Origin: Macrostomum lignano
Lineage: Eukaryota
Direction of reading: 5' to 3'
NCBI GenBank assembly: GCA_002269645.1
Contig: NIVC01002420.1
Location: 112,107-176,106, forward strand
Length of the DNA: 64,000 nucleotides
The first letter of the stretch is position 1; each line of letters starts with the position of its first letter. Under the pieces are notes generated by a model. The model did no database searches. It saw only the letters and a list, made by a program, of their open reading frames with translations, and was not told the origin of the DNA. A program made the position numbers and the translations under genes. Below are positions 17,516 through 50,225 of this stretch, piece after piece.

Positions 17516-17569
17516 GTGAAAAAATCATGGATCATGGTTTTTCAAAATTTTCATCGCTTCATCGCCAAC

Positions 17570-27659: not shown

Positions 27660-27945
27660 AATTGATCTGGTCCTTCTCCTTGCCTCCTCTCCATTTCTCT
27701 TCTCATCCTCTCACCACTCTTCTCATTCCTTTCCTCTCTTCTCTGTCCCCTCTCCCCTCTCCCCTGTCCCCTCTCCCCCTCTCCCCTCTCCCCTTCACTC
27801 TCCCCTGTCTCCTCTCCTCTCCCCTCCACTCTCCCCTCTCCCCTTCACCCTCCCCCTTCCCTCTCCCTTACCTCTTTCCTCTCTCTACTCCACCCTCTGC
27901 TTTCTCCTCCCCTCTCTCCCTCTCTCTTCTTCCTCTCCTCTCCTG
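27660..27945. repeat. Intronic polypyrimidine low-complexity tract
   Basis: Direct reading. Confidence 0.9.
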
Positions 27946-28036
27946 ACAGGATATCGAGCCACTTAATGTTCGCTATTACACATGTCTTGCTTTCTGACTT
28001 CCCCTCTGAGAAATATCCCCCTCCAACCCTAAGCAG

Positions 28037-28438
28037 GCGGCCCCCAACGAGGCGGAGGCAGCAATCAAGACCAATAACTCGACATCATCATCGCCTCAAG
28101 TCTCAGATTCGCCGTCGAATTCACCTGACGCATCTCAACGCCGCACTAATAAGCCCAAAGCTCTCGATATCGAGCTGGAAGAGTTCCAACCAAACAACCG
28201 TCTGGCAACTTCGTCACTGCTAGCTGCAGCAAATATTCACGTGACCGTGACTGCCCCAACCCCAAGTCCTTCGGCGTCGCCCTCTGCTAGATCGGCAGCT
28301 TCAACAAGCGACGATAATAGCGCCGAGGTGCAGTCTCCTCCGGTGCCTAGGGAATCGTTGGATTGTCGAACTGAAACCGTAGTGCAAGATGGTGTACAGT
28401 TTCGCAGGGTGACGCTTGTTAAGTCTGATTCTCCTCTG
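28037..28438 (+). CDS. MPP5: PALS1-like exon (Ser/Pro linker plus PDZ start FRRVTLVKSDSPL)
   Basis: taagcag| acceptor and CTG|GTGAGA donor; 134 open codons. Confidence 0.75.
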
Positions 28439-28519
28439 GTGAGAGTTGATATTGATTCATACTAAATATTGGATGCGATCGATTGTTATTTGTTAGGATT
28501 GTCAAAGTTTTTTTTCAGA

Positions 28520-29050
28520 GATCTTTAGGTTCTTGTCAGATATCTTCAGGTTGTTCTTGTCAGATATCTTAAGCTTTTGTCAGAGATCTCCAGCTTCTTG
28601 TCAGATATCTTCAGCTTTTGTCAGAGATCTCCAGCTTCTTGTCAGATATCTTCAGGTTATTCTTGTCAGATATCTTCAGCTTTTGTCAGAGATCTTCAGG
28701 TTCTTGTCAGAGATCGTCAGGTTTTTCTTGTCAGATATCTTCAGCTTTTGTCAGAGATCTCCAGCTTCTTGTCAGATATCTTCAGCTTTTGTCAGAGATC
28801 TTCAGGTTCTTGTCAAAGATCGTCAGGTTTTTCTTGTCAGATATCTTCAGGTTCTTGTCAGATCTGACTTTCAGGTTCTTATCAGAGATCTTCAGGTTGT
28901 TCTTGTCAGATATCTTCAGATTTTTGTCAGCGACAAAAGGTTGTTCTTGTCAGAGAGCTTCAGTTTCTTGTCGGATCTTCAGATTATTGTCAGCGATCTT
29001 GATGTTATTGTCAGAGGTTGCTTTTTGTCAGATATCCTCAGGTTATACTG
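28520..29050. repeat. Intronic degenerate repeat (TTCTTGTCAGATATCTTCAG-like)
   Basis: Direct reading. Confidence 0.9.
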
Positions 29051-29235
29051 GTTATTGTAAATGATCTTCAATAACCTTAAGGTTATTCTTTAGGAATCTC
29101 CTTGATTCTGGTCTGAAATCTCATATTTTCTTGTCAGAAAACTCATTTCATCTAGTCAAATATCCTTTAGTATAGTTTTTTTGTAGCCAAATGCCTGGCA
29201 TAGATCGACTTTAATGTTTAAACCGATTCATCCAG

Positions 29236-29400
29236 GGCGCCACAGTGAAAAATGTTGGCGACTCGGTCGTAGTCAGTCGCATTGTCTGCGGCGGCCTGCT
29301 CGACAGAATCGGCGACCTCATTGGCGAGGGCGACGAGCTGATCTCGGTGAATGGCATCGACCTGACTGGGAAGCACGTTAACGAGGTGTACGACCTGCTG
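29236..29400 (+). CDS. MPP5: PALS1-like PDZ exon
   Basis: Reads [55 protein letters not shown]; catccag| acceptor and |GTGAGC donor. Confidence 0.92.
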
Positions 29401-29436
29401 GTGAGCCGCTGCTCGCTTCTCCAGGGTGGAAGGATG

Positions 29437-29990
<554 letters not shown>

Positions 29991-30123
29991 GGCACTAAGA
30001 CGGACAGGCACTCACAGACAGGACAGTCGGTGACGCGGACAGCAAAACAGACAGCCACACAAACCCACGCTGCTCCCGCTCAATCGTCTACCCCCCCCCC
30101 CCAAAAAAAAACGTTATTTGCAG

Positions 30124-30408
30124 CAAAGTCTCTCTGGACGGTTGGTTTTTCTAACAGTGCCCTGCACAGAGTATCGACCTACAGAGCGAAACAACAACAG
30201 CAGTAGCAGCAACAGCAATAACAATGTAGAATCCTCAACTGTACTTCGCGCTCTTTTCACTTACGAGCCGTCTGAGGATCTGTATAATCCCTGTCGCGAA
30301 GCAGGATTAGAATTTCAAGTTGGCGATTTAATTCGAGTGCTCAACACTAAAGATCCGAACTGGTGGCAGGGAGTGAAGGAGATAGAGGCGGCAACTGGGC
30401 TCAGACCT
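30124..30408 (+). CDS. MPP5: PALS1-like SH3 exon
   Basis: Reads QSLSGRLVFLTVP...LRALFTYEPSEDLYNPCREAGLEFQVGDLIRVLNTKDPNWWQG; tttgcag| acceptor and |GTGAGT donor. Confidence 0.93.
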
Positions 30409-30469
30409 GTGAGTTGTAATTCGTTTAGTACAACAATCCCACTTAAATATCCCGGACCCCAATCTTAGC

Positions 30470-30740
30470 GAGAATTCCTGATCCCAATTCCAGCGAGGAT
30501 CTCTGATCCCAAGCCCAGCAAGAATCCCTGATCCCAATTCCAGCAAGGATCCCTCATCCCAATCCCAGAAAGAATCCCTGATCCCAATCTTTTTCGAGGA
30601 TCCCTGACCCCAATCCCAGACAAATCCAAAATCCCTCATCCCAATCTCAGCCAAATCCAGAATCTTTGATCCAAATCCCAGCAAGGATCCCTCATCCCAA
30701 TCTCAGCCAAATCCAGAATCCCTTATCTCAGCCCAAATGC
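30470..30740. repeat. Intronic degenerate ATCCCAAT repeat
   Basis: Direct reading; resembles the reverse complement of the 9255-10855 unit. Confidence 0.8.
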
Positions 30741-31069
30741 ATACTGATATGGAGTTAATAAATGCGTGTAATTCTTGGTCACATGAACGCATAGGATAGC
30801 AAAGCCGAGTGTACCCACTTGCCAGAGCAAGGCCAATGCTTAAAAGCTTTGAAAGTAACCCAAATTCCACTCTGTTTGCATTGCTAATTAGTTTTCTTAT
30901 TATATTAAAGAGGCACCCCAAAGTCTTACTAACAGATTACATTACAGTCAAGTTTAATGTTAATTAACTCAACATTATGCTCGTATATTGCTATACTGTA
31001 ACATTGTGTTACCTGATTATGCAAAAAACGTGCTTTTAGTCTTCAATGACTAAATCTTGGTATTTTTAA

Positions 31070-31445
31070 TGACTCAAAGCGACCTGAAATGAGCTAAATG
31101 ATCTAAAGTAATCCTGAATGTCCCAAAATAATCCAGAATGACCCGAAGTGATTCTCAATGACTCAAAATGATCATAAACTACTTAAAGTGATCTTGAATG
31201 ACCCAACAGGATCCCAGATGACTCAAAATTATCCCGAATAACTCAAAAGTTATCCCGAATGACTCAAAATCATCCCTAATGACTCAAAATCATCCCTAAT
31301 GACTCAAAATCATCCCTAATGACTCAAAATCATCCCTAATGACTCAAAATCATGCCGAATAACTCAAAATGACCAAAAATAATCTCAAACGAGTCTTAAA
31401 ATGATCGCAAACCACTCATATGACCAAAAAAGATCCCGAATGACC
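31070..31445. repeat. Intronic 20-bp repeat (AATGACTCAAAATCATCCCT-like)
   Basis: Direct reading. Confidence 0.85.
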
Positions 31446-31453
31446 CAAAGCAG

Positions 31454-31769
31454 CGGCAGGAGTCGGCCAGAAGCCTGGTCGGCATTTTTCCGTCGCCGGA
31501 TTTTCAACGCCGACGGCAGCTGATGCTGTCGATGGCCGCGGCCAACGCAGCCGAGGCGACAGTGGATGCCAGCTCGAGCAGCTGCTGCTGGCGCTGTCAA
31601 AGATGCTTGCCATTGAAACGATTCGGCATCCGAGCTGGACGTCGTCGTCAAGATAACCGGTACGCGCCCGCCGACTTATCCGCTAGATCGTCGGGCTCGT
31701 CGTCGACGTCTGGAGAGTCCGACACGGAGCCTGACGTCGTCATTGATGACGGAGGCGGTCGTAATGGCA
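31454..31769 (+). CDS. MPP5: PALS1-like exon (SH3 end plus HOOK)
   Basis: SLVGIFPSPDFQRRRQ resembles the MAGUK GL.P...FQ motif. A|GTTAGT donor, phase 1. Confidence 0.82.
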
Positions 31770-31891
31770 GTTAGTGTGGGTCTTGTGTTTCTTTAAATTA
31801 AAACTAAAGAGGTGGCGAGGCATTTGCTACTATAAACGAAATTTTATTTACTCTGGCCGTTTACCCAGTTAGTCTAACAATCAATTCGCAG

Positions 31892-32166
31892 GCAACAGTC
31901 GAAAGCGGCATCGCGTCGGATCGTCGCGTCGTCAAAAACGGCGGCACAGAAGAAGATTTTTTGAGCCGCAGGCGCTGCTGCAGCCGAAGCCGTTCCGGCG
32001 ACGGCCACTCGTACTGGTTGGACCTCCCGGAGTTGGGCGACACGAACTGCGGGTTCGTCTGATCGAGTCCGACCCGGCCAGGTTCGCTCCTGCTCTGCTG
32101 CACACCACACGGCAGCGGCGCCAGGATGAGACTGACGGCATCGACTTTGAGTTCACTACTAGACAG
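31892..32166 (+). CDS. MPP5: PALS1-like guanylate kinase exon 1
   Basis: Reads RRPLVLVGPPGVGRHELRVRLIESDPARFAPALLHTTRQRRQDETDGIDFEF. Phase 1 in, phase 0 out. Not in the ORF track. Confidence 0.92.
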
Positions 32167-32240
<74 letters not shown>

Positions 32241-32241
32241 C

Positions 32242-32300
<59 letters not shown>

Positions 32301-32301
32301 C

Positions 32302-32344
<43 letters not shown>

Positions 32345-32345
32345 C

Positions 32346-32380
<35 letters not shown>

Positions 32381-32393
32381 CAGTTAGTTAGTC

Positions 32394-32428
<35 letters not shown>

Positions 32429-32429
32429 C

Positions 32430-32464
<35 letters not shown>

Positions 32465-32477
32465 CAGTTAGTTTGTC

Positions 32478-32520
<43 letters not shown>

Positions 32521-32580
32521 CAGTTAGTTAGTTAGTTAGTTAGTCAGTTAGTTTGTCAGTTAGTTTGTCAGTTAGTTAGT
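32167..32580. repeat. (GTTA)n microsatellite starting exactly at the splice donor
   Basis: CAG|GTTAGTTAG... Confidence 0.97.
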
Positions 32581-33019
32581 TATGCAAAAGGCAGCTTCAA
32601 ACTGCAAACCACACACACGGAAATATTGAAGAACGTTAGTTGTCGAATATTCAGAAACCGATATTTCGGCCTGGACTGGGCCTTCGTCAGGGTTTATTTA
32701 TTCGGGTTTAAAAACAAATATATTGGCTGTGAAGTTATTTTAACATAATTTCAATATATATATGCGACTTTTGGGGGTGCACTGAGCAGTGTTGAGTAAA
32801 GAAGTGTACGTATAATTAGTTAAAAACGTGAGTTGAAGCACGCTGATTGGTTAAAGTCTTGCAGCTAAAGCCCTGCACAAAAATAAAGATGTTAGACGCC
32901 ATAGAAAAACAGATTTAAAGCGTAGAAGTGTATGACTAAGCATCTTGAAAAGTTCAACAAATAAGTTAATTACGCCCGTAGAAAAAAAAATATTAAATTA
33001 ATACAGAGCACTGAGAACT

Positions 33020-33035
33020 GGTTAGTTAGTTAGTC

Positions 33036-33086
<51 letters not shown>

Positions 33087-33087
33087 C

Positions 33088-33142
<55 letters not shown>

Positions 33143-33143
33143 C

Positions 33144-33182
<39 letters not shown>

Positions 33183-33235
33183 CAGTCAGTTAGTTAGTTA
33201 GTTAGTTAGTTAGTTGGTTGGTTAGTTAGATAGTC

Positions 33236-33286
<51 letters not shown>

Positions 33287-33319
33287 CAGTCAGTTAGTTA
33301 GTTAGTTAGTTGGTTGGTC

Positions 33320-33395
<76 letters not shown>

Positions 33396-33415
33396 GGTTG
33401 GTTAGTTAGATAGTC

Positions 33416-33446
<31 letters not shown>

Positions 33447-33487
33447 CAGTCAGTTAGTTAGTTAGTTGGTTGGTTAGTTAGTTAGTC

Positions 33488-33527
<40 letters not shown>

Positions 33528-33547
33528 GGTTGGTTAGTTAGGTAGTC

Positions 33548-33598
<51 letters not shown>

Positions 33599-33599
33599 C

Positions 33600-33630
<31 letters not shown>

Positions 33631-33639
33631 CAGTCAGTC

Positions 33640-33675
<36 letters not shown>

Positions 33676-33695
33676 GGTTGGTTAGTTAGGTAGTC

Positions 33696-33726
<31 letters not shown>

Positions 33727-33755
33727 CAGTCAGTTAGTTAGTTAGTTAGTCAGTC

Positions 33756-33787
<32 letters not shown>

Positions 33788-33807
33788 GGTTGGTTAGTTA
33801 GTTAGTC

Positions 33808-33883
<76 letters not shown>

Positions 33884-33935
33884 GGTTAGTTAGTTAGTTA
33901 GTTAGTTGGTTAGTTAGTTAGTTAGTCAGTTAGTC

Positions 33936-33966
<31 letters not shown>

Positions 33967-33971
33967 AAGTC

Positions 33972-34006
<35 letters not shown>

Positions 34007-34031
34007 CAGTTAGTTAGTCAGTTTGTTAGTC

Positions 34032-34066
<35 letters not shown>

Positions 34067-34067
34067 C

Positions 34068-34102
<35 letters not shown>

Positions 34103-34167
34103 CAGTTAGTTAGTCAGTTAGTTAGTTAGTTAGTTAGTTATTTAGTTAGTTAGTTAGTTAGTTAGTC

Positions 34168-34206
<39 letters not shown>

Positions 34207-34270
34207 CAGTTAGTTAGTTAGTCAGTTAGTTAGTTAGTCAGTTAGTTAGTTAGTTAGTTAGTCAGTTAGC

Positions 34271-34303
<33 letters not shown>

Positions 34304-34387
34304 GGTTAGTTAGTTAGTTAGTTAGTTGGTTAGTTAGTTAGTTAGTCAGTTAGTCAGTTAGTTAGTTAGTTAGTTAGTTAGTAAGTC

Positions 34388-34431
<44 letters not shown>

Positions 34432-34459
34432 GGTTAGTTAGTTAGTTAGTCAGTTAGTC

Positions 34460-34490
<31 letters not shown>

Positions 34491-34495
34491 AAGTC

Positions 34496-34538
<43 letters not shown>

Positions 34539-34563
34539 CAGTTAGTTAGTCAGTTAGTTAGTC

Positions 34564-34622
<59 letters not shown>

Positions 34623-34623
34623 C

Positions 34624-34674
<51 letters not shown>

Positions 34675-34740
34675 CAGTTAGTTAGTCAGTTAGTTAGTTA
34701 AGTTAGTTAGTTGGTCAGTTAGTTAGTTAGTTAGTTAGTC

Positions 34741-34783
<43 letters not shown>

Positions 34784-34856
34784 CAGTTAGTTAGTTAGTC
34801 AGTTAGTTAGTTAGTCAGTTAGTTAGTTAGTTAGTTAGTCAGTTAGCTAGTTAGTC

Positions 34857-34895
<39 letters not shown>

Positions 34896-34896
34896 C

Positions 34897-34943
<47 letters not shown>

Positions 34944-34995
34944 CAGTTAGTTAGTTAGTTAGTCAGTTAGTTAGTTAGTCAGTTAGTTAGTCAGT
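33020..34995. repeat. ~2-kb (GTTA)n/(GTCA) microsatellite
   Basis: Direct reading. Confidence 0.98.
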
Positions 34996-35030
34996 TACTT
35001 ACTTAGCCAGCTCCCCCTGCCACTCCGCAG

Positions 35031-35312
35031 GAGTTTCAGCGCCGCATTCGGGAAGGCGGCCACTTCCTGGAGACGGGCCAGTTCAACGGCGATCTGTACG
35101 GCATCAGCGTGGCGAATGTGATCAGCGTGGTGGAGTCTGGCTCGGTGTGCGTGCTCACCATGCAGCCGGCCGGACTCAGGGCCATTCGGCGACACCCGGC
35201 AAGGCTGATGCCCTACTCAGTTTTTGTCAGTCCGCCGCCAAGTTTAAATGGACTGCGCGCTCTGCGACGAAAATTGTCCCCCAGTGGCGCCGAAGTGGCG
35301 CCTGAGGATAGC
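35031..35312 (+). CDS. MPP5: PALS1-like guanylate kinase exon 2
   Basis: Reads EFQRRIREGGHFLETGQFNGDLYGISV...CVLTMQP...LMPYSVFVSPP; ccgcag| acceptor and |GTGAGT donor. Confidence 0.92.
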
Positions 35313-35384
35313 GTGAGTGAATGTTCTATTACCGATTGGAAGCTGAAACTCTAGGGTCTGGAGTCTCACGGTGAGATTAAGGTG

Positions 35385-35700
35385 TGCTATCTCAGGGTGA
35401 GATTCTAAGGTGTGGTATCTCAGGGTGAGATTCTAAGGTGTGCTATCTCAGGGTGAGATTCCAAGGTGTGGTATCTCAGGGTGAGATTCTAAGGTGTGGT
35501 ATCTCCGGGTGAGATTCCAAGGTGTGGTATCTCAGGGTGAGATTCTGAAGTGTGGTATCTCAGGGGGAGATTCTAAGGTGTGGTATCTCAGGGTGAGATT
35601 CTAAGGTGTGGTATCTCAGAGTGAGATTCCAAGGTGTAGTATCTAAGGGTGAGATTTAAAGGTGTCATGTTTCAGTGTGAAATTCTCAGGGTGAAATTCA
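35385..35700. repeat. Intronic 28-bp minisatellite (CAGGGTGAGATTCTAAGGTGTGGTATCT)
   Basis: Direct reading. Confidence 0.93.
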
Positions 35701-35874
35701 AATGTGTGGTATTTAAAGGTAAGATTCTCGTGTCTCGTGAATTTTCTTGTACATGTATGTGAGACTTCAGATTTGTTGAGACTTCCTATAGCTGAGTTGA
35801 GGTGAAATTTGCAGTAATAAGAGGTGAGCTTTCGGACTTAGCAGGGGTTGTCCTAACTTTTTTTATCTTTCAAG

Positions 35875-36108
35875 GACGCCGATTTGCACAAACTGATCGA
35901 CCTGAGCCGCCGCATGGAGGAGTCCTGCGGTCATCTGGTCGACCGAGTGTTGGTCAACACCGATTTGAGCGCCTCGGTTGCCCAGCTGGTTGGCATGGTA
36001 ACCCGTCTTGAACGGGAGCCGCAGTGGGTTCCAGCGTCTTGGCTGCAGCCTCCGGCGGCTGCCGCTGCTCGACTGGCTGGTAGCGAGATTGCTGACACAG
36101 CCTGTTGA
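35875..36108 (+). CDS. MPP5: PALS1-like terminal exon
   Basis: Reads DADLHKLIDLSRRMEESCGHLVDRVLVN...EPQWVPASW, the canonical p55-MAGUK end, then TGA. Confidence 0.92.
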   Translation, partial: DADLHKLIDLSRRMEESCGHLVDRVLVNTDLSASVAQLVGMVTRLEREPQWVPASWLQPPAAAAARLAGSEIADTAC

Positions 36109-40364: not shown

Positions 40365-42045
40365 CGCGGTGATTCTCAGCCTGGTTTATCAGCGATTCTC
40401 AGTCTGGTTTATCGGCGATTCTCAGCCTGGTTTATCCCTGATTCTCAGTCTGGTTTATCGGCGATTCTCAGTCTGGTTTATCGGCGATTCTCAGCCTGGT
40501 TTATCGGTGATTCTCAGTCTGGTTTATCAGCGATTCTCAGTCTGGTTTATCAGCGATTCTCAGTCTGGTTTATCGATGATTCTCAGTATGGTTTATCAGC
40601 GATTCTCAGTCTGGTTTATCCCTGATTCTCAGTCTGGTTTATCGGTGATTCTCAGTCTGGTTTATCAGCGATTCTCAGCCTGGTTTATCGGTGATTCTCA
40701 GTCTGGTTTATCAGCGATTCTCAGTCTGGTTTATCAGCGATTCTCAGTCTGATTTATCGATGATTCTCAGTCTGGTTTATCAGCGATTCTCAGTCTGGTT
40801 TATCGGCGATTCTCAGTCTGGTTTATCGGCGATTCTCGGTCTGGTTTATCGTTGATTCTCAGTCTGGTTTATCGGATTCTCAGTCTGGTTTATCGGCGAT
40901 TCTCAGCCTGGTTTATCGGTGATTCTCAGTCTGGTTTATCAGCGATTCTCAGTCTGGTTTATCAGCGATTCTCAGTCTGGTTTATCGATGATTCTCAGTA
41001 TGGTTTATCAGCGATTCTCAGTCTGGTTTATCCCTGATTCTCAGTCTGGTTTATCGGTGATTCTCAGTCTGGTTTATCAGCGATTCTCAGCCTGGTTTAT
41101 CGGTGATTCTCAGTCTGGTTTATCCCTGATTCTCAGTCTGGTTTATCGGTGATTCTCAGTCTGGTTTATCGGTGATTCTCAGTCTGGTTTATCAGCGATT
41201 CTCAGTCTGGTTTATCGGCGATTCTCAGTCTGGTTTATCGGCGATTCTCGGTCTGGTTTATCGTTGATTCTCAGTCTGGTTTATCGGATTCTCAGTCTGG
41301 TTTATCGGTGATTCTCAGTCTGGTTTATCGGCGATTCTCAGTCTGGTTTATCGGTGATTCTCAGTCTGGTTTATCGGTGATTCTCAGTCTGGTTTATCGG
41401 TGATTCTCAGTCTGGTTTATCGGTGATTCTCAGTCTGGTTTATCGGATTCTCAGTCTGGTTTATCGGCGATTCTCAGTCTGGTTTATTAGCGAATCTCAG
41501 TCTGGTTTATCGGTGATTCTCAGTCTGGTTTATCGGCGATTCTCAGTCTGGTTTATCGGTGATTCTCAGTCTGGTTTATCGGTGATTCTCAGTCTGGTTT
41601 ATCGGTGATTCTCAGTCTGGTTTATCGGTGATTCTCAGTCTGGTTTATCAGTGATTCTCAGTCTGATTTATCGGTGATTCTCAGTCTGGTTTATCGGTAA
41701 TTCTCAGTCTGATTTATCGGTGATTCTCAGTCTGGTTTATCAGCGATTCTCAGTCTGGTTTATCGGTGATTCTCAGTCTGGTTTATTAGCGATTCTCAGT
41801 CTGGTTTATCGGTGATTCTCAGTCTGGTTTATCGGCGATTCTCAGTCTGGTTTATCGGTGATTCTCCGTCTGGTTTATCGGCGATTCTCAGTCTGGTTTA
41901 TTAGCGATTCTCGGTCTGGTTTATCGTTGATCTTCAGTCTGGTTTATCGGTGATTCTCAGTCTGGTTTATCGGTGATTCTCAGTCTGGTTTATCGAAAAT
42001 TCTTAGTCTGGTTTATCGGTGATTGTCAGTCTGGTTTATCGACGA
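40365..42045. repeat. 23-bp minisatellite (GATTCTCAGTCTGGTTTATCGGY)
   Basis: Direct reading. Confidence 0.97.
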
Positions 42046-43189
42046 TTGTTAATGCTGTTATTTAGGAAGATTTTATTCGAATTCGATGTAGCAGCGAACA
42101 CACAGCAATGTATATATTTTTCAGAGTAATAAGCGTTTGCAAAACACCAGGGTAGTCATAGAGTGCAAATGCAAACACTCAATTTTATTTTAGTCTTTGT
42201 TCAAGAGCGTCCTTGATAACACACAAAGCACCTCAGTTTAAGTCCATTCCACAATTCCTAGTCAGTCAGTGAGTCACTCCACCAGTCATGTGATGCGATG
42301 AATTTGCGTTCTTTAATTGTCCAATTCTTTAACGCTTTCACAAAAAACAGATGCTAGGCTTGATTACGAAGATTGGACAAGTAAAGCGCTGAAAACCAAA
42401 AACTCAAGTGCAAAGAGGGCAAACAAAACTTGTTTCGTTTTGCTGTTGAATGCATTTAGAAAATCACGTGCTTTCTTAAATTCTTATGCTAGGGCTTGCT
42501 TGTTCATCTGCAAATCATCTGCATATGGCAGCATAGCATCGCAAAGCTGGTGGTGGTTGTCTGTCTGGCCTGGATAGATGGATGGCGGATGATGCCCGTG
42601 CTTGTGCCTGTGCAGGCAGGCTAAGCCATAAAAGGCAGACGAATAGAAAGCAAGAGATTTGGCCTAGAACTGGAACTTTATCAGTTCAACTACTAAAAGT
42701 TGCGCGCGGCCTGGCGGCCTGGCGGGCGGGCGCAAGCAAAGCCTCTCCTGCTACTGACTAATGCCCCCCCCCCGATCTTGTCCTTATTGGGCCAAGCGGG
42801 TGAAGGGACAGGGAGGAGAGGGAAACGGGGTTTATAGGATTATCAGTAAGATCTACGAGATGTGGAGGCCCAGGCCCAGGAGGGGGTGGGTTGTAAAAAC
42901 TGAGGTCCTCTGAATTCTTACAGATAAGATTTTTTCTTATATTTAAACTGAATGTACATTCACCCCTCCCCATAAGTCGAGTGTACAAACGAACAACTCC
43001 CCAACACCCCCATGGGCCCCGGAAAACGACGTCATTTTTTCTGACCTAAATGAACCCAAGCCCCCCTCCCGTCACCCATCCAGTTCTGCCCTTAGCCCTC
43101 ACAGCCCCCCTCCCAAATTCACATCAGCGAAGCCAAGCCCCCGTTCTTTTTGTATCTCCTCTCCTCTCCCCTTACCCCAGGCCCCAGCC

Positions 43190-43197
43190 TATATAAA
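43190..43197 (+). promoter_or_regulatory. TATA box of the secreted basic protein gene
   Basis: TATATAAA about 120 bp upstream of the ATG, after a C-rich upstream region. Confidence 0.6.
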
Positions 43198-43315
43198 CGT
43201 AGCAATTTTCCACGCCTGTAAGAAATTTCCTCACCAAGAATTCTGCTTGCTTGGTTTCTTGGTTGATCCTCTTCATTATCCTAGGACCTCCTACTAGATC
43301 GTACTAATCCTAACT

Positions 43316-43449
43316 ATGGGCCTGCCAACGGTAGCTCTGGCTCTATGCCTGTTCGCGGCGGCTGTCTATTATCCAACAGAGGCTATGCCGCAGCCCCAGT
43401 CTGCCGATGACAAAGGTCTGGTGCCCGCCGGAGAATCCGGGACCGGAGT
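43316..43449 (+). CDS. Secreted Arg/Lys-rich protein, exon 1 (signal peptide)
   Basis: Reads MGLPTVALALCLFAAAVYYPTEA|MPQPQSADDKGLVPAGESGTG, then GT|GTAAGT donor (phase 2). Too short for the ORF track. Confidence 0.85.
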
Positions 43450-43578
43450 GTAAGTTGATCGAACATTAGTTATGTTTGCATTTTGAGTATTATTAGCATT
43501 ACAAGTTTTATTTTTTATTTTTACATATCGTCTACTTTTTTAAGTAGTAAAATCAATATTTTTCGCGCGATTTTATAG

Positions 43579-43936
43579 TCAACGCCAACAGCCGGGAGCT
43601 GCCAGCGCTGGCGCCGTGGACGCCCAGACTCAGACAGACGGCGCTGTTCAGCAGAGCGACCGTCGGCGAGGTCGCGGCCGCGGCCGCAAAGGCCGTCGCA
43701 ATCGCAAGGGCAAGCGTCGCGAAGGCAAGCGCAACCGGTGCCGCACGCCGGAGTGTAAACGAGAGCGCCGATTGCGCCGCAAGCAGCGCCGGCAGCAGCG
43801 CCGGGAGCAGCGCCGGCAGCGCAAAAACGGACGCCGCGGCGGCAGGGGCGGCAGAGGCCGGCGCCGTCGCAAGGATCGCAAGCAGCGGCCGCAGGAGACG
43901 CAGCTGCCACAGGCTCCCGCTCCGGCGCCTCAATAA
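43579..43936 (+). CDS. Secreted Arg/Lys-rich protein, exon 2 (polybasic domain)
   Basis: ttttatag| acceptor after an AT-rich 129-nt intron restores the frame into ORF 43616-43936. The stop TAA overlaps an AATAAA. Confidence 0.85.
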
Positions 43937-45586
43937 ATGTTAATTATCAATAATCATCAGCCTGGACTCAGCACCTGCATTAGTTAATCTATTTTGTACT
44001 TTTATTACAGCTAATTAAACAAACTGGCCAGCAATTTGTATAGTTTATTATTTTAGCCGAATTGCAAATTTCTTAAAATTTGAATTCGCGCCTAAATTCG
44101 TCAATTGACGAGTTAAAACAAAACGAAAGTTAATTTCTGGCTTTTCGAAAAATACAATAGTAATTTTTCACTTCATAATCCTTTAACCTACTATATAATA
44201 ATATAAGTAGCACAGTTAGCGCGCATTCTTAAAAAAAGCTTTTGTCCGAATGCGTTGCATTCTTGCTTTCTGACTGGTTTGATTAATGATTCTTATTATA
44301 GTAAGACATTCTTTCATAACAGCCCTAGCCCTTCTAATATAAAATTTATTGCATAGTATAAAAAATAAAATAGCGACTGCTTTACTGCAAACTTAACCTG
44401 TTTTCTATTTTAAATATACGGATTCAAAATATAAAAAAAATAAGTTGTTTGTTTCAAAATAATGCGATTCTTGAGCAATTATTTTGCTTCGGGAGCCACT
44501 TTGCCCGCTTCACTAAAGCACACAAATGAATTATATAATGATTTGCATAATTATTAATCAAGCTTTTATTGATTTATTATTAAATATTTGTCTTTTTTCC
44601 AATTCATTTTTCTTTACACCAACAGACCATTGAACATTGTTTTCAATTGCGGTTTGTTAAAAGCAAGAAACAAACTAACAAAGTAAATTAACACATACGA
44701 AGCAAACCGAGAACACTTGAATGCTCCATTGATTGAACAAACACAATGAACACGAGCGAGAGTAGTATATAGTTAAGTATTAGTAGTATAATGACGAGCC
44801 GTTTTCTTGTTGGCGGAAAATTAAAACTTGAAAAAAAACTTGATTTGTTATACAATACAAATCGGAACGCAAAGGTCGCTTAGGAGAGCTGAAATATCGC
44901 GCATGAGACACTGGTTGGAGAGAATCTCAATATTTGACGATTGGCTCGAATCAAGTTCTCTGTATCCGGGTTTGCCAGACTAATTAGTAAGTAGTACGAG
45001 CGTATTTTAGGATTTTTATACTTATTTAAACAATGCACAGAAATTCAACTGTAAACTACTTATTCAATGAGTAGTATGTAGAGGATATTAAAAGTAGCCA
45101 TTTAGTCACAAATTTCACCAAAATAATCTGGCAAACCCGGGTTACACACAGCTGAGAGAACAATCAAAAGTGCGCCAATGCAGTTCGATCTTTATTACTT
45201 TAATTATATAGTAGTAACAGTGGTATCCGCACTTGTTTGCAAAAGTTATTGTTTCGGAACAGAAAATGCTAATGTAATATTTTCTTTAAAGTTTGCAACG
45301 TACTTCGCTTGTTTTTGCTTGAGGAAAAACAGTCAAAGAGATGGAACAAAAATATTATAATATAAATTATACGAAGGGGAAATGAAGAAGAGTATCTGTT
45401 TCACCCAATAAATACTGAATATTTGAACTTCTACACTGCAAAGGTGTCAAGCGATCATGATGGTGACAGACGGATGAACGAACAAAAAACACACGCCTAA
45501 CAAGTACGACTGGGGCAGACACACTGTTGAATAGGATTTCTGAGCTTTGCCTTAAATCACTGAACTAGCCCCAATACATCAAGGAG

Positions 45587-45714: not shown

Positions 45715-46660
45715 TCATAAACTACTTACAGATCAGTCATAACTCTACTCCCCAGTCATTGGCCATAAAGCTGCTCATACAACAGTCATAAAGCTACTCA
45801 CAAAACAGTCATCAAGCAACTCATACAACAGTCATAAAGCTACTCACAGAACAGTCAAAAAGCAACTCATACAACAGTCATAAAGCTACCCACAAAACAG
45901 TCATCAAGCTACTCATACAACAGTCATAAAGATACCCACAAAACAGTCATCAAGCTACTCATACAACAGCCATAAAGATACCCACAAAACAGTCATCAAG
46001 CTACTCATACAACAGTCATAAAGATACCGACAAAACAGTCATCAAGCTACTCATACAACAGTCATAAAGATACCCACAAAACAGTCATAAAGCTACTCAT
46101 ACAACAGTCATAAAGATACCCACAAAACAGTCATCAAGCTACTCATACAACAGTCATAAAGCTACTCACAAAACAGTCATCAAGCAACTCATACAACAGT
46201 CATAAAGATACCCACAAAACAGTCATCAAGCTACTCATACAACAGTCATAAAGATACCCACAAAACAGTCATAAAGCTACTCATACAACAGTCATAAAGC
46301 TACCCACAAAACAGTCATCAAGCAACTCATACAACAGTCATAAAGATACTCACAAAACAGTCATCAAGCAACTCATACAACAGTCATAAAGATACCCACA
46401 AAACAGTCATAAAGCTACTCACAAAACAGTCATCAAGCTACTCATACAACAGTCATAAAGATACCCACAAAACAGTCATAAAGCTACTCATACAACAGTC
46501 ATAAAGCTGCTCACAGAACAGTCATAAATCTACCCACAAAACAGTCATAAAGCTACCCACAGAGCTGTCAAAGCTACTCATACAACGGCCATAAAGCTAC
46601 TCTCACAACAGTCATAAAGCTAATCACAGAACAGCCATCGGTCATAAAAGCTACTCCAAC
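45715..46660. repeat. Intronic 23-bp minisatellite, largely alternating dimer (AACAGTCATAAAGCTACTCATAC / AACAGTCATCAAGATACCCACAA-like)
   Basis: Direct reading. Confidence 0.95.
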
Positions 46661-46680
46661 TAAGCGACATGAGCACTCAC

Positions 46681-49600
46681 GCATCCGGTGGCAAATTTGC
46701 TGGCTGCCCAGCATGCAACAATTGCTGCGACGGTTGCTGCTGCTGCTGCGTGGCTGCAGGTCTGGCGGCGCCAAACACAAAAGTTGAAGCCGCGCCGCTT
46801 GGCTGATTGGCGCCGAAAACAAAAGTTGACGACGCTGCACTCGGTTTGGGCTCGGCATCCAAATCGACAACAGGCTGGGAAGCCTGAGCTGGCGCCAGTT
46901 TAGAGCCGAATAGACCAGGCGGTGGTGCGGCGGCGCCTGGCGCACTATTGGCGCCATTGGCGCCCCCAAACAGACTAGCGCCATTTGACCCGCCCCCAGC
47001 GCCAAAGTTAAAAGCTGGCGCCGTCAGCTGCGACGGCGCCGAAGAGTCGGACAATTTTGATAGCTTATTGCTGGGCTGATCTGGCGCCGGCGCCGCTGGC
47101 GCGGAGGCGCCAAAAGCGAACGGAGCTGCAGTGGTAGCAGCGGCGGTGGCGGCTGGTCCCGCGCTAAAATTGAAGTTCATCGAAGGCTTAACCGATGTCG
47201 TTGTTGAACTGTCCAGATTTAATTTCCGCTTTGAATCTCTCGACGACGCGGGGGCAGCGGCGGAGGCGGCGGTGGTGCTGCTATTAAAGGAAAACAACCC
47301 GGCTGGTGCCGCAGATGCGGCGGCGCCAAAAGTCGGCGCTGGCGCCGCTGCCGATGATGAAGCTATAAAACTGAGCTTCGGACCACCATCGTTGGATGCT
47401 GAATTGCCAAACAATCCGAAGCCAGGATTTGGTGCGGCATCGCTTGCGGCAGCTGAAGATGAAGCAGGAGCAGTGCTTGAAGAGACAAACGATGGAGCTC
47501 GAAATCCAGTCATACCGCTTTGACCTGCTGATGGCGTACCCGACGAAATGCCAAAACTAATCTTTGGACCAGCTTCACTTGTAGCTGATGAAACTCCAAA
47601 GCTGACTTTCGCTGGGGAATCAGTCAAAGCTCCAGACAAAGGAGTACTAAAACTGATCTTTAGGCCAGACGCTACCGATGATGGAGCGCCTAGACTGATC
47701 TTCGGTCCAGCATCACTTTGAACAGCTAGGGCACCTGATGAAGCTCCAAGGTTGATTTTTGGTCCAGCATCACTTTGAGCTGCTGATGCAACCGATGAAG
47801 CTCCAAAACTGATTTTCGGTCCAGAATCACTCTGAGCTGCTGATGCAACCGATGAAGCTCCAAAACTGATTTTCGGTCCAGAATCACTCTGAGATGCTGA
47901 TCCAACCGATGAAGCTCCAAAGTTAATCTTCGGTCCAGCATCACTCTGAGCTGCTGAGGCAACTGTTGAAGCCCTAAAGTTTATCTTCGGTCCAGCATCA
48001 CTCTGAGCTGCTGATGCAACTGATGAAGCTCCAAAGTTAATCTTCGGTCCAGCATCAATCTGAGCTGCTGATGCAACTGATGAAGCTCCAAAGTTAATCT
48101 TCGGTCCAGCATCACTCTGAGCTGCTGATGCAGCTGATGAAGCTCCAAAACTTATATTCGGGCCAGAATCACTTGTAGTTCCAGACGATGGAGCACCAAA
48201 GCTGATCTTCGGCCCAGCATCACTTTTAGTTCCAGACGATGGAGCACCAAAACTTATCTTCGGCCCAGCATCACTTGCAGTTCCAGACGATGGGGCACCA
48301 AAGCTGATCTTCGGCCCAGCATCACTTGCAGTTCCAGACGATGGGGCACCAAAGCTGATCTTCGGCCCAGCATCACTTGTAGCTCCTGACGATGGAGCAC
48401 CAAAGCTGATCTTCGGCCCAGCATCACTGCCACTTGCCGCAGCACTGGATGGTTTTGACACTGCACCTGGCCTAGGCGACTCGCAAGCAACGCAACGACT
48501 AACAGAGACAACATTTTCAACAAGACAGGTGTCGCATTGCCACTTTGACGAGGCACTGGACTGTTGGTGCTGCTGATGCTGCTGCGAGAACATTGAAAAT
48601 ATCGGAACAGTAGCTGGTCCACGGTCAATAAAACTTGGCCGCTTTGTCATACCGCCACTAGATTGAGCTGACACCGGAGCTGTAACAGCACTAGACAATG
48701 GTCGTTTTTCTTGGCACACAACGCACACCTGAGAACTAGCTGGACTGGTGCACATACAGGTATTGCAACGCCATTCACCTGTGCCTGTTTCCGCTGATGC
48801 AGTTGACGATGCCTTAGCAGCAGTCGAAGTCATCGTAGCTGTACCAGTGCTTGAAGAAGACGGCCGTTTCTCTTGACAGACAACGCACACCTGGGAACTA
48901 GCTGGACTGGTGCACATACAGGTATCGCATCGCCATTCTCCAGCAGCGTTCGCTGCCGCGGTGGCAGGAGCACTAACCGATGCTGCTGGAACCGCAGCAG
49001 ACCCTGACAATGAAGGTCGCTTCTCCTGACAGACTACGCAAACCTGCGACGAAGCTGGACTGGTGCACATGCAGGTAGAACAGCGCCAATCTGTTGATGC
49101 AGCCGCCGAAGTTGAAGGCGCAACAGCACTGACGGCACTGGAAGCAGATAGTTGTTTCTTAGACTTCACAGTGCAACTAGTGCAAGTTTTAACTCCTGGC
49201 TGATTAGTAACCATGCAACTGAGGCATTGCCAACCGGTGCTAGCGGAACTGCTACTAGTAGTAGCAGAAGCAGTAGTTGAGGATTTTCCACGAAATATAG
49301 GCACAGAAAATTGAAATTGCATTGCTTCATCGTCTAATATCAGCGGCTGTTGCTGTTGCTGCTGGGACTGCTGCTTCTGGCGACTATCTAACCCTGCAGT
49401 TCGATAATTATCCGAAGCGATGGAGGCCGGCGCCGGCTGCTGATGCTGACCGCGCGACGGCGGCGTCCCGACGCCGCCACCAGCTTGAAATCGACGCCGA
49501 TAAGCAATCCGATAAGGCGGAGCGAATACCGCATTGGAACTACTACTATTAGTAGTAGCATTATTCTCATGATTGTTATTTAAACTTGAACCAGAGTAAG

Positions 49601-49692
49601 GAGTCGATGGAATACGACGAGCGTCTGTCAAAGGAGTTGATAGTCGATCCAGAGCGTCGAGAATCTTTTTGGCTGTAGGCGTCACCAAGTGT

Positions 49693-49725
<33 letters not shown>

Positions 49726-50225
49726 AAGTTGGAGAACCTGTCCGATTGAGTCTCCAACTGTAACGGAGTGACTCTCACTGACCTGCCAGGATGAGCAGCA
49801 GCCGCCTGAGCATTGAATCTGCCGCCGTAACCTGTACGACCCGGATAGAATAAAGATGTTGAGGATGAAGACGGAGACGAGCCCAGCATAGCCATGGTTC
49901 TCGATCGCTTAGCCGAATTGCCCAGATTCAAGCTGAACTCATCATCATGGTGCCGCCTTTTGCCGCGTTCCACATTGGAAGAAACTGTTGCTGATGACCA
50001 CAGATGACTGCAATTGTTGTTGCTGCTAGGGCGATTTGCCGGCCCAGTCATGACGTCATCAGTGGCGGTTCCGCCTAGACCGCGGCGACGTCTTGCCTGC
50101 TGCTGAGAGGCCGACTGTTGCTGTTGCTGTTGAGGCGATGACTGACGGGGAGAAATACCGATTGCCGACTCTGCTGTGGAATCCGACTGTTGCTGAGGCT
50201 GCTGCTGCTGCTGACTGGTGGCAGG
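46681..50225 (-). CDS. NUP153: Nucleoporin Nup153-like large exon: N-terminal motif, 5 RanBP2-type zinc fingers, FG repeats
   Basis: PTAKKILDALDRLSTPLTDARRIP motif; five W-x-C-x2-C-x10-C-x2-C fingers; FG repeats. Frame stays open 58 codons upstream of ATG 50051 to an atctag| acceptor. GC|GTGAGT donor. Confidence 0.9.

What the first reader, a model, noticed from the sequence alone, without database searches (positions are those of the whole stretch)
43190..43937. Compact two-exon gene for a secreted, protamine-like polycationic protein
Seen: TATA box, ATG, hydrophobic signal peptide with a TEA cleavage-like site, phase-matched 129-nt intron, and a stop overlapping AATAAA. The 163-aa product has a polar Gln/Ala pro-region, then a 76-aa block with 45 Arg/Lys around one C-x4-C pair (RCRTPECK), and a Pro/Gln tail. 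I recognise no family. Established: secreted polycations serve as antimicrobial peptides, heparan- or nucleic-acid binders and bioadhesives; the Macrostomum adhesive protein Mlig-ap1 is K/R-rich. Inference: a lineage-specific secreted effector (adhesion or release, antimicrobial, or seminal fluid), possibly cut at its many polybasic convertase sites.
Basis: partly seen in the sequence, partly recalled or inferred. Interest (0 to 1): 0.8.

Follow-up and report, generated by a model that had tools for sequence, protein, structure and literature searches.

The report
Orphan flatworm gene for secreted polycation
A compact two-exon gene in the flatworm Macrostomum lignano very probably encodes a small secreted protein whose core is about 60% arginine and lysine; nothing like it was found in any database searched, and whether it is expressed and what it does remain untested.

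Summary
These are TATATAAA (43190), the first ATG (43316), a signal-peptide-like N-terminus, and a 129-nt GTAAGT...TTTTATAG intron (43450-43578, 24% GC between exons of 62% and 72% GC). The frame continues to a TAA that overlaps AATAAA. The product has 163 aa, including a 76-aa block with 36 Arg, 9 Lys and one C-x4-C pair.

The combination is not chance. The motifs are rare in the window, and only 3 of 136 ATG-ORFs have such an N-terminus. The proposed frame also has the best match of all six frames to M. lignano optimal codons.

The window is M. lignano, because a neighbouring MAGUK gene is 99% identical to a UniRef M. lignano protein. The protein has no relative in 5.8 billion clustered proteins, 1.84 billion representatives, Pfam, the PDB, or viral and metagenome contigs.

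The basic block is 75% Gly/Arg/Lys and has one hydrophobic residue. By composition it therefore resembles the secreted GRK polycations of flatworm adhesives (Mlig-ap1 flanks, ap3) or protamine. It does not resemble an amphipathic antimicrobial peptide.

Best reading: a lineage-restricted secreted polycation that binds polyanions electrostatically. Expression, secretion, tissue and role are untested.

The parts
43190..43197 (+). TATA box (TATATAAA), 126 nt upstream of the start codon
   Evidence: Read directly. It is the only TATA-like match on the + strand between 42000 and 44350. The base rate is 0.06 per kb per strand.
43198..43315 (+). Predicted transcription start and 5' UTR (start about 25-35 nt after the TATA box, inferred); no upstream ATG
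   Evidence: No ATG in 43198-43315. The position of the transcription start is inferred, not shown.
43316..43449 (+). Exon 1 coding part: residues 1-44 plus two bases of codon 45
   Evidence: Translation. GC is 62%. Start context aacTATGg.
43316..43384 (+). Signal-peptide-like segment, residues 1-23 (MGLPTVALALCLFAAAVYYPTEA). The hydrophobic core is residues 6-17. Candidate cleavage is after A23 (T-E-A) or after A16 (A-A-A).
   Evidence: Peak Kyte-Doolittle mean is 2.72 over 11 residues, with no charged residue before E22. AlphaFold predicts a helix at 3-18. Only 3 of 136 ATG-ORFs in the window pass the same criteria. No SignalP run was possible.
43450..43578 (+). Intron, 129 nt, phase 2, GTAAGT...TTTTATAG
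   Evidence: GC is 24% against 62% and 72% in the flanking exons. Read-through gives in-frame stops. A verified intron of the neighbouring MAGUK gene shows the same GT..AG ends and GC contrast.
43579..43936 (+). Exon 2 coding part: last base of codon 45 to the stop TAA (43934-43936). It contains no ATG, so it needs exon 1.
   Evidence: The fraction of M. lignano optimal codons is 0.627 in this frame, the highest of the six frames.
43385..43660 (+). Spacer or pro-region, residues 24-72 (interrupted by the intron): Gln/Ala/Gly/Thr/Asp-rich, net charge -4, predicted disordered
   Evidence: pI 4.05. AlphaFold gives pLDDT around 50 and no secondary structure.
43661..43888 (+). Polycationic block, residues 73-148: 36 R, 9 K, 12 G (75% G/R/K), net charge +40. 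It consists of an RG-rich segment, C99-RTPE-C104, an Arg-rich helix and an RGG-rich segment.
   Evidence: Composition. AlphaFold predicts helices 79-96 and 102-131 (pLDDT above 90 for about residues 100-130) with a break at the Cys pair.
43739..43756 (+). C-x4-C pair (Cys99 TGC, Cys104 TGT), the only cysteines of the mature protein
   Evidence: Read directly. A disulphide is inferred, not shown.
43774..43820 (+). Four copies of a 12-nt unit (GCGCCGGCAGCA-like) encoding (R-R-x-Q)x4 inside the long helix
   Evidence: Tandem Repeats Finder: period 12, 3.9 copies, 88% matches. The repeat finder family D1.
43889..43933 (+). Pro/Gln-rich C-terminal tail, residues 149-163
43932..43937 (+). AATAAA overlapping the stop codon. 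A second candidate polyadenylation signal, ATTAAA, lies at 44014-44019.
   Evidence: Use of either signal is inferred.

Best explanation
This is a real, lineage-restricted (orphan) protein-coding gene of Macrostomum lignano. A TATA-box promoter drives a short transcript, and one 129-nt intron is removed.

The 163-aa product enters the ER through a cleavable N-terminal signal peptide. What is released is a protein of about 140 aa and 16 kDa, with pI about 12 and net charge about +35. It has three parts:
- a mildly acidic disordered spacer;
- a 76-aa Gly/Arg/Lys polycation, made of two Arg-rich helices joined at a C-x4-C turn and flanked by RG/RGG stretches;
- a Pro/Gln tail.

It has almost no hydrophobic residues. 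It would therefore act by multivalent electrostatic binding, condensing or cross-linking polyanions outside the cell, or inside secretory granules. Such polyanions include sulfated or carboxylated glycans, glycocalyx and nucleic acids. This is how the GRK regions of flatworm adhesive proteins are thought to act.

The two cysteines would form either a small intramolecular ring or an intermolecular link.

Shown: the sequence features and the absence of relatives. Inferred: transcription, splicing, secretion, binding to polyanions, and the tissue.
For: - **Gene signals:** they are coherent and individually rare.
- **GC steps:** exon and intron GC change exactly at the splice sites, as in a verified neighbouring intron.
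- **Need for exon 1:** exon 2 has no ATG, so it must be joined to exon 1.
- **Codon usage:** optimal codons were taken from the M. lignano codon-optimised reporters, which were designed from the 100 most expressed genes (PMC5730564).
  - The fraction of optimal codons is 0.627 in the proposed frame of exon 2, against 0.33-0.53 in the other five frames.
  - The whole CDS scores 0.559, against 0.27-0.45 for neighbouring genes and 0.429 +/- 0.037 for composition-matched random synonymous choice.
  - CGC makes up 57% of Arg codons and GGC 65% of Gly codons.
- **Signal-peptide-like N-terminus:** a 12-residue uncharged hydrophobic core, Pro at -4, small residues at -3 and -1, and a negative flank downstream. 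The base rate in this window is about 2%.
- **Polycation composition:** 75% G/R/K with 1 hydrophobic residue in 76.
- **Precedent in the same animal and its relatives:**
  - Mlig-ap1 carries more than 3,600 aa of secreted K/R-rich regions.
  - In other flatworms a stand-alone secreted GRK protein, ap3, carries a signal peptide.
  - Heparin blocks attachment, and cationic peptides block release (PMC6410801; PMC9229212).
Against: - No transcript, homologue or paralogue is available, so neither splicing nor purifying selection can be shown.
- The protein is absent from the M. lignano proteomes held in the databases. This is weak evidence, because the certainly real Nup153-like neighbour is absent too.
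- Five of six frames are open over exon 2, and the codon test separates the frames only moderately (0.627 against 0.526).
- No trained signal-peptide predictor was run, and the n-region has no basic residue.
- RG/RGG boxes and Arg-rich helices are typical of intracellular nucleic-acid binders.
- The protein is about 40 times smaller than the GRK adhesive proteins.
- The acidic spacer (-4) cannot neutralise +40.
Confidence: 0.5

Rival explanations
1. It is the precursor of a host-defence (antimicrobial) peptide. The signal peptide and the anionic pro-piece are removed, and the cationic C-terminal part, possibly cut further at dibasic sites, kills or excludes microbes on the epidermis or in the gut.
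For: - The layout is bipartite: signal peptide, an acidic part (-4) and a basic part (+40).
- It is an orphan gene with codon usage typical of high expression.
- These are the hallmarks described for Hydra antimicrobial peptides such as the arminins (PMC10945409).
Against: - The basic block has 1 hydrophobic residue in 76 and is not amphipathic, unlike membrane-active antimicrobial peptides.
- There is no cluster of paralogues within 64 kb, whereas Hydra antimicrobial genes sit in tandem families.
- At 76-91 aa it is long for an antimicrobial peptide.
- No M. lignano antimicrobial peptide literature was found to compare with.
Confidence: 0.12
2. It is an intracellular nucleic-acid-binding protein: a protamine-like sperm nuclear basic protein made as a precursor, or a nucleolar RGG/Arg-rich RNA binder. 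The hydrophobic N-terminus would then be incidental, or bypassed by initiation at Met24.
For: - The basic block is 47% Arg, with RGRGRGR and RRGGRGGRGRRRR runs, an Arg-rich helix and two cysteines.
- Protamines are often cut from longer precursors and sporadically contain cysteine (PMC11607694).
- Met24 lies exactly after the predicted signal-peptide cleavage site. Initiation there would give the same 'mature' protein in the cytosol.
Against: - The first ATG after the TATA box has a strong context (A at -3, G at +4) and encodes a canonical signal-peptide-like segment. Such a segment would send the chain to the ER.
- No H1 winged-helix, HMG-box or other nuclear-protein domain was found.
- No relative exists among known nuclear proteins.
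Confidence: 0.12
3. It is not a functional gene. A GC-rich low-complexity island, partly grown by slippage of a 12-nt unit, happens to lie next to promoter-like and splice-like motifs. Alternatively it is a young proto-gene, transcribed at best at noise level.
For: - Five of six frames are open over the island.
- It contains internal 12-nt and 21-24-nt repeats.
- The window is full of tandem arrays that create long spurious ORFs.
- There is no homologue or paralogue, and no entry in the available M. lignano proteomes.
Against: - The coincidence required is large. It needs a TATA box, no upstream ATG, an ATG in strong context, a signal-peptide-like N-terminus (2% base rate), a perfect GTAAGT exactly at the GC drop, an acceptor exactly at the GC rise, the correct phase, and a stop in AATAAA.
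- The codon bias towards M. lignano optimal codons is specific to the proposed frame, and exceeds neighbouring genes and composition-matched controls.
Confidence: 0.2

Closest known systems
GRK (Gly/Arg/Lys) low-complexity regions of flatworm temporary-adhesion proteins: the flanks of Mlig-ap1 in M. lignano, and the stand-alone ap3 proteins (Mile-ap3, Tmed-ap3) (PMC6410801, PMC9229212)
   Same: - Same animal or phylum.
- The protein is secreted through a signal peptide.
- The composition is dominated by G, R and K (75% here), with extreme positive charge and almost no hydrophobic residues.
- The proposed action is electrostatic binding to polyanionic partners.
   Different: - The basic region is 76 aa, against about 3,600-3,700 aa.
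- There is no long tandem repeat array.
- It is richer in Arg than Lys, and has Gln/Glu where ap1 has Ser/Pro (the published peptide is SRKPRRKNRKSRKP).
- It has a C-x4-C pair and an acidic spacer.
- Expression in adhesive glands is unknown.
Protamines and protamine-like sperm nuclear basic proteins
   Same: Short Arg-dominated polycation with RRRR/RGG runs, occasional cysteines and a non-basic leader that could be removed. It would condense polyanions by charge neutralisation.
   Different: - It has a signal-peptide-like hydrophobic N-terminus, which nuclear protamines lack.
- It has no H1 or HMG ancestry.
- Arg is 47% of the basic block, but only about 26% of the mature chain.
Bipartite, taxonomically restricted antimicrobial peptide precursors such as Hydra arminins (PMC10945409)
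   Same: Signal peptide, then an anionic part, then a cationic C-terminal part. It is an orphan gene, and its codon usage suggests high expression.
   Different: It is not amphipathic and its cationic part is much longer. No tandem paralogues lie in the 64-kb window. No activity data exist.
Arginine-rich motif or cell-penetrating helices (HIV Rev/Tat type) and RGG boxes of RNA-binding proteins (comparison from general knowledge, not tested)
   Same: RRLRRKQRRQQRREQRRQRK is predicted to be a confident helix of the same compositional type. RG/RGG runs flank it.
   Different: Those motifs work inside cells on RNA. Here the chain is predicted to be exported. No homology was found.

Membership tests
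Flatworm adhesive GRK-repeat proteins (Mlig-ap1 KR regions, ap3) | N-terminal signal peptide or secretion | tested here: inconclusive
   Rule-based features are met. No trained predictor was run and there is no experimental secretion data.
Flatworm adhesive GRK-repeat proteins (Mlig-ap1 KR regions, ap3) | Low-complexity region made mostly of Gly, Arg and Lys, with extreme positive charge | tested here: met
   Residues 73-148 are 75% G+R+K, with net charge +40 and pI about 12.
Flatworm adhesive GRK-repeat proteins (Mlig-ap1 KR regions, ap3) | Very long repetitive region (thousands of residues) | tested here: not met
   The block is 76 aa. The only repeat is a 12-nt unit in four copies. Published ap1 KR regions exceed 3,600 aa and Tmed-ap3 is 3,700 aa.
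Flatworm adhesive GRK-repeat proteins (Mlig-ap1 KR regions, ap3) | Sequence relationship to ap1 or ap3 | tested here: inconclusive
   No hit in any search. Low-complexity sequence is down-weighted by HMMER, and the ap1 and ap3 sequences could not be retrieved.
Flatworm adhesive GRK-repeat proteins (Mlig-ap1 KR regions, ap3) | Expression in adhesive gland cells of the tail plate, and presence in footprints | not testable with these tools
   Needs in situ hybridisation, positional RNA-seq or antibody staining.
Protamines / sperm nuclear basic proteins | Small protein dominated by arginine | tested here: met
   36 of 76 residues in the basic block are Arg. The whole product has 37 R in 163 aa.
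Protamines / sperm nuclear basic proteins | Nuclear protein without a secretory signal | tested here: not met
   The N-terminus is signal-peptide-like.
Protamines / sperm nuclear basic proteins | Histone H1 winged-helix or HMG-box ancestry in protamine-like types | tested here: not met
   No Pfam family at E <= 1. No PDB or fold match.
Protamines / sperm nuclear basic proteins | Spermatid-specific expression and presence in sperm chromatin | not testable with these tools
   Needs expression data or acid extraction of sperm nuclei.
Cationic antimicrobial peptide precursors (bipartite type) | Signal peptide followed by an anionic and then a cationic part | tested here: met
   Residues 1-23 are hydrophobic, residues 24-72 have net charge -4, and residues 73-148 have net charge +40.
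Cationic antimicrobial peptide precursors (bipartite type) | Amphipathic mature peptide with a substantial hydrophobic fraction | tested here: not met
   There is 1 hydrophobic residue in the 76-aa block. The predicted helix 105-127 has mean hydropathy -3.76.
Cationic antimicrobial peptide precursors (bipartite type) | Antimicrobial activity | not testable with these tools
   Needs an assay of synthetic or recombinant protein.
Neuropeptide / prohormone precursors | Repeated non-basic peptides flanked by dibasic cleavage sites, often with an amidation Gly | tested here: not met
   Between basic residues there are only single G, N, Q or E residues. No recurring peptide is present.

The most novel reading that the evidence does not exclude
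M. lignano makes a free, miniature 'GRK module': a 16-kDa secreted mini-protamine that works as a soluble electrostatic regulator of a glandular secretion. One possibility is a stand-alone ap3-like cohesive or counter-ion component of the duo-gland adhesive system, one that titrates the unknown polyanionic releasing factor. Another is a seminal-fluid polycation transferred to the partner. Either would be a new, very small and tractable class of extracellular polycation, found without any homology.
Probability: 0.12. Interest if true: 0.65.

Novelty: new variant of a known kind. Interest (0 to 1): 0.4.

Why it matters
If the gene is expressed, it adds a very small and experimentally tractable secreted polycation to an animal whose reversible adhesion is already explained by polycation-polyanion chemistry. 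That could help identify partners of the still unknown releasing factor, or inspire minimal coacervating peptides.

It also illustrates two gaps in current methods:
- Extreme-composition orphan genes are missing from the M. lignano protein sets held in the databases searched here.
- Such proteins would escape tryptic proteomics.

If the gene is not expressed, it is a cautionary example of how gene-like a GC-rich island can look.

Tried and rejected
**Homology searches (all empty)**
- Word-indexed search of 5.8 billion clustered proteins.
- Exhaustive phmmer against 1.84 billion representatives.
- Pfam and PHROGs.
- PDB by sequence (only E = 1.7 noise).
- AlphaFold model against the PDB by Foldseek.
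- Viral and metagenome contig scans.

**Exact-sequence look-ups**
- The exon-2 ORF and the Nup153-like neighbour are not on record.
- P0071 and P0082 have no contig on record. No second genomic copy of the locus could therefore be fetched for a conservation test.

**Other sequence checks**
- A 22.6-kb M. lignano locus fetched through a paralogous MAGUK (L001) holds no relative.
- There is no paralogue or repeat copy in the window.
- No LTR- or TIR-like repeats flank the locus, so a mobile-element origin was rejected.
- Rfam and tRNA scans found nothing, so a structured-RNA reading was rejected.

**Alternative readings rejected**
- Minus-strand ORFs over exon 2 have no ATG, poor splice contexts and lower optimal-codon scores.
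- Spliced-leader trans-splicing onto the 43578 acceptor, with an ATG donated by the leader, was considered. That the leader ends in ATG is recalled from memory and was not checked. That frame ends after about 60 codons and has the lowest optimal-codon score, 0.328.

**Uninformative tests**
- Synonymous-codon likelihood trained on the neighbouring genes did not discriminate between frames.
- Literature searches for the peptide strings found nothing. Neither did searches of the supplements of the seminal-fluid and adhesion papers.
Full report
**1. Observation**

- TATATAAA lies at 43190-43197. The next ATG on the strand is at 43316, with no ATG in between. Its context is strong: A at -3 and G at +4.
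- The reading frame runs 134 nt to a perfect donor, GTAAGT, at 43450.
- The 129-nt stretch up to TTTTATAG (ending at 43578) is 24% G+C and contains in-frame stops.
- The frame resumes at 43579 in the correct phase and runs to TAA at 43934-43936. This stop sits inside AATAAA (43932-43937). A second candidate signal, ATTAAA, is at 44014.
- The spliced product has 163 aa, with 37 Arg and 10 Lys.

**2. Is it more than chance?**

ORF length is not evidence here. Exon 2 is 72% G+C, and five of its six frames are open. The case rests on other points.
- **Composition steps.** G+C goes from 62% to 24% to 72% to 29%, exactly at the proposed donor, acceptor and stop.
- **Same pattern in a verified gene.** I mapped the UniRef M. 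lignano protein P0071 onto the neighbouring MAGUK gene. This gave real introns with GT..AG ends, exons of about 62% G+C and introns of 30-44%.
- **Rare motifs.** TATATAAA occurs 0.06 times and GTAAGT 0.10 times per kb per strand in this window.
- **Dependence on exon 1.** Exon 2 has no ATG in any frame position of the product, so it cannot be translated without exon 1.
- **Rare N-terminus.** Of 136 first-ATG ORFs of at least 40 aa in the window, only three start with an uncharged, strongly hydrophobic segment. One of the other two is a tandem-repeat artefact.
- **Codon usage.**
  - The optimal codon for each amino acid was read from the reporters that Wudarski et al. optimised using the 100 most expressed M. 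lignano genes (PMC5730564).
  - The fraction of optimal codons is 0.627 in the proposed frame of exon 2, against 0.33-0.53 in the other five frames.
  - It is 0.559 for the whole CDS and 0.27-0.45 for the neighbouring genes.
  - It is 0.429 +/- 0.037 for random synonymous codons drawn with the same base composition.
  - The preference is codon-specific and not just G+C: CGC 57% against CGG 19%, and GGC 65% against GGG 5%.
  - This supports both the frame and a high expression level, but the margin over the next-best frames is moderate.

**3. Organism and surroundings**

Concatenated exons of the MAGUK p55 gene (26.8-36.1 kb, + strand) hit a UniRef Macrostomum lignano protein at 99% identity.

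The locus is single-copy in the window. It lies in 3.7 kb of unique sequence between two tandem arrays: 40367-42041 (a 23-mer repeated 73 times) and 45764-46639 (a 46-mer repeated 19 times). It is convergent with a Nup153-like gene on the minus strand at 46677-50051. No terminal repeats suggest a mobile element. No Rfam family or tRNA is present.

**4. The protein**

- **Residues 1-23** (MGLPTVALALCLFAAAVYYPTEA) have a 12-residue uncharged hydrophobic core with a peak hydropathy of 2.72. This is too short for a membrane anchor.
  - Pro is at -4, and small residues are at -3 and -1.
  - The downstream flank is acidic, which favours translocation of the C-terminal side.
  - AlphaFold makes residues 3-18 a helix.
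  - This is a textbook signal-peptide layout, but I could not run a trained predictor.
- **Residues 24-72** are Gln/Ala/Gly/Thr/Asp-rich, carry net charge -4 and are predicted disordered.
- **Residues 73-148** hold 36 Arg, 9 Lys and 12 Gly (75% G/R/K). The net charge is +40, and there is a single hydrophobic residue.
  - The single-sequence model gives helix 79-96, a break at C99-R-T-P-E-C104, and a confident helix 102-131 (pLDDT above 90). RG/RGG-type runs lie on both sides.
  - Part of the long helix, (R-R-x-Q)x4, is encoded by four copies of a 12-nt unit. The block therefore grew at least partly by slippage.
- **Residues 149-163** are Pro/Gln-rich.
- **The mature chain** would be about 16 kDa, with pI about 12 and charge about +35.
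- **Cleavage motifs.** Strict furin motifs (R-x-[KR]-R) occur four times, and dibasic positions 22 times.

**5. Relatives**

None were found.
- The searches covered 5.8 billion clustered proteins, 1.84 billion representatives read exhaustively, Pfam and PHROGs.
- They also covered the PDB by sequence and by fold and viral and metagenome contigs.
- The M. lignano UniProt and NCBI protein sets are in those databases, so the gene is not annotated there. The obviously real Nup153-like neighbour is missing as well. Absence therefore says little about expression.
- No second genomic copy could be fetched, so no test of selection was possible.

**6. What it most likely is and how it works**

The most economical reading is a lineage-restricted gene for a small secreted polycation.

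The decisive property is composition. With one hydrophobic residue in 76, the basic block cannot form the amphipathic surface that membrane-active antimicrobial peptides use. It can bind polyanions multivalently, as protamine does.

The same animal offers a direct precedent.
- Mlig-ap1, the cohesive protein of the duo-gland adhesive organs, carries more than 3,600 aa of secreted Lys/Arg-rich regions with pI above 14.
- Heparin blocks attachment, and cationic peptides or free Lys/Arg block release (PMC6410801).
- In a proseriate and a polyclad flatworm, the Gly/Arg/Lys part is a separate secreted protein, ap3. Tmed-ap3 has a signal peptide and 3,700 aa (PMC9229212).
- These data show that flatworm secretory cells export extreme polycations intact.

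I therefore propose electrostatic binding, condensation or cross-linking of polyanions. The site would be outside the cell or inside secretory granules. The partners would be sulfated or carboxylated glycans, glycocalyx or nucleic acids. The Cys pair would form a six-residue ring or an intermolecular bridge.

Which gland makes the protein cannot be told from sequence. M. lignano also has dozens of small, novel, signal-peptide-bearing prostate transcripts (PMC5977470). A seminal role is therefore as open as an adhesive one.

**7. Rivals**

- **(a) Antimicrobial precursor.**
  - For: the bipartite charge layout, orphan status and codon bias match Hydra antimicrobial peptides (PMC10945409).
  - Against: the lack of amphipathicity and of tandem paralogues.
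- **(b) Nuclear protamine-like or nucleolar RNA-binding protein.**
  - For: the composition, the RGG runs and the Arg-rich helix all fit. Protamine precursors are known (PMC11607694). Met24 lies right after the predicted cleavage site, so initiation there would give a cytosolic form.
  - Against: Met1 is the first ATG, is in strong context, and encodes a signal-peptide-like segment. No nuclear-protein domain is present.
- **(c) No functional gene.** This is possible, because there is no transcript or homologue. It would require a long chain of coincidences plus frame-specific codon bias.

**8. Comparison with what is known, and novelty**

The protein works like the GRK regions of flatworm adhesives, or like a secreted protamine. 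It is not shown to be a member of any family.
- It fails the size and repeat criterion of ap1/ap3.
- It fails the no-signal-peptide criterion of protamines.
- It fails the amphipathicity criterion of antimicrobial peptides.

I rate it a new variant of a known kind, namely secreted polycations. Interest is moderate, because the composition is striking but orphan secreted proteins are common in this animal and expression is unproven.

**9. Verdict**

  - Gene model, orphan status and flatworm origin: yes.
  - Secretion: plausible.
  - The listed roles: untested, with the classical antimicrobial one least likely.
- Confidence in the best explanation is 0.5.

Noticed in passing
window 46677-50225 (-): A single long ORF (1,124 aa from the first ATG) encodes a Nup153-like nucleoporin with RanBP2-type zinc fingers and GPKISFGA-type repeats. 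Its best database hits are only 24-30% identical (fish Nup153). No M. lignano entry was found, so this gene appears to be missing from the M. lignano protein sets in the databases.
   Followed up: partly
window 26864-36105 (+): A MAGUK p55 (MPP7/PALS2-like) gene with L27, PDZ, SH3 and guanylate-kinase exons. Its introns are filled with tandem arrays. One intron starts with (GTTA)n directly after the donor at 32167, and a (CAGA/'DRQT')n array abuts the PDZ exon at about 29.4-30.0 kb.
   Followed up: partly
window 31454-35244, compared with protein P0082: The UniRef M. lignano protein P0082 (labelled 'CSD domain-containing') is about 96% identical to the first MAGUK exon here and then drifts through frameshifted matches. 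It looks like a mis-modelled or degenerate duplicate copy of this gene elsewhere in the polyploid DV1 genome.
   Followed up: partly
window 9045-17848 (-): Exons of a PDZ-domain scaffold gene with a weak harmonin-homology-domain match (17528-17848) and PDZ exons (9045-9302, about 10950-11200). It is probably a harmonin/whirlin-like protein.
   Followed up: partly
window 23684-24067 (-) and 22505-22843 (+): A mariner/Mos1-type transposase N-terminal fragment (HTH_48, HTH_32 and HTH_23 hits). A nearby ORF looks like the endonuclease of a non-LTR retrotransposon by eye but has no Pfam hit.
   Followed up: partly
window 13.2-15.1 kb, 17.9-19.7 kb, 36.1-38.4 kb, 40.4-42.0 kb, 45.8-46.6 kb, 60.3-61.0 kb: Many long minisatellite arrays, for example a 23-mer repeated 73 times at 40367-42041 and a 46-mer repeated 19 times at 45764-46639. 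They generate ORFs of 150-590 aa in several frames on both strands. These are spurious 'genes' and fit the reported 15% of simple and tandem repeats in this genome.
   Followed up: partly
window 62711-63400 (+): A second ORF with a signal-peptide-like N-terminus (MVLCQPLLAFIASVLLCSSTAAASS...; 229 aa from the ATG) and no Pfam match. It may be another secreted orphan protein or the first exon of a larger gene.
   Followed up: no
window 43028-43034: GACGTCA, a 7-of-8 match to the cAMP-response element (TGACGTCA), lies about 160 nt upstream of the TATA box in a C-rich stretch (42950-43190). It is a possible promoter element. Its significance was not tested.
   Followed up: no
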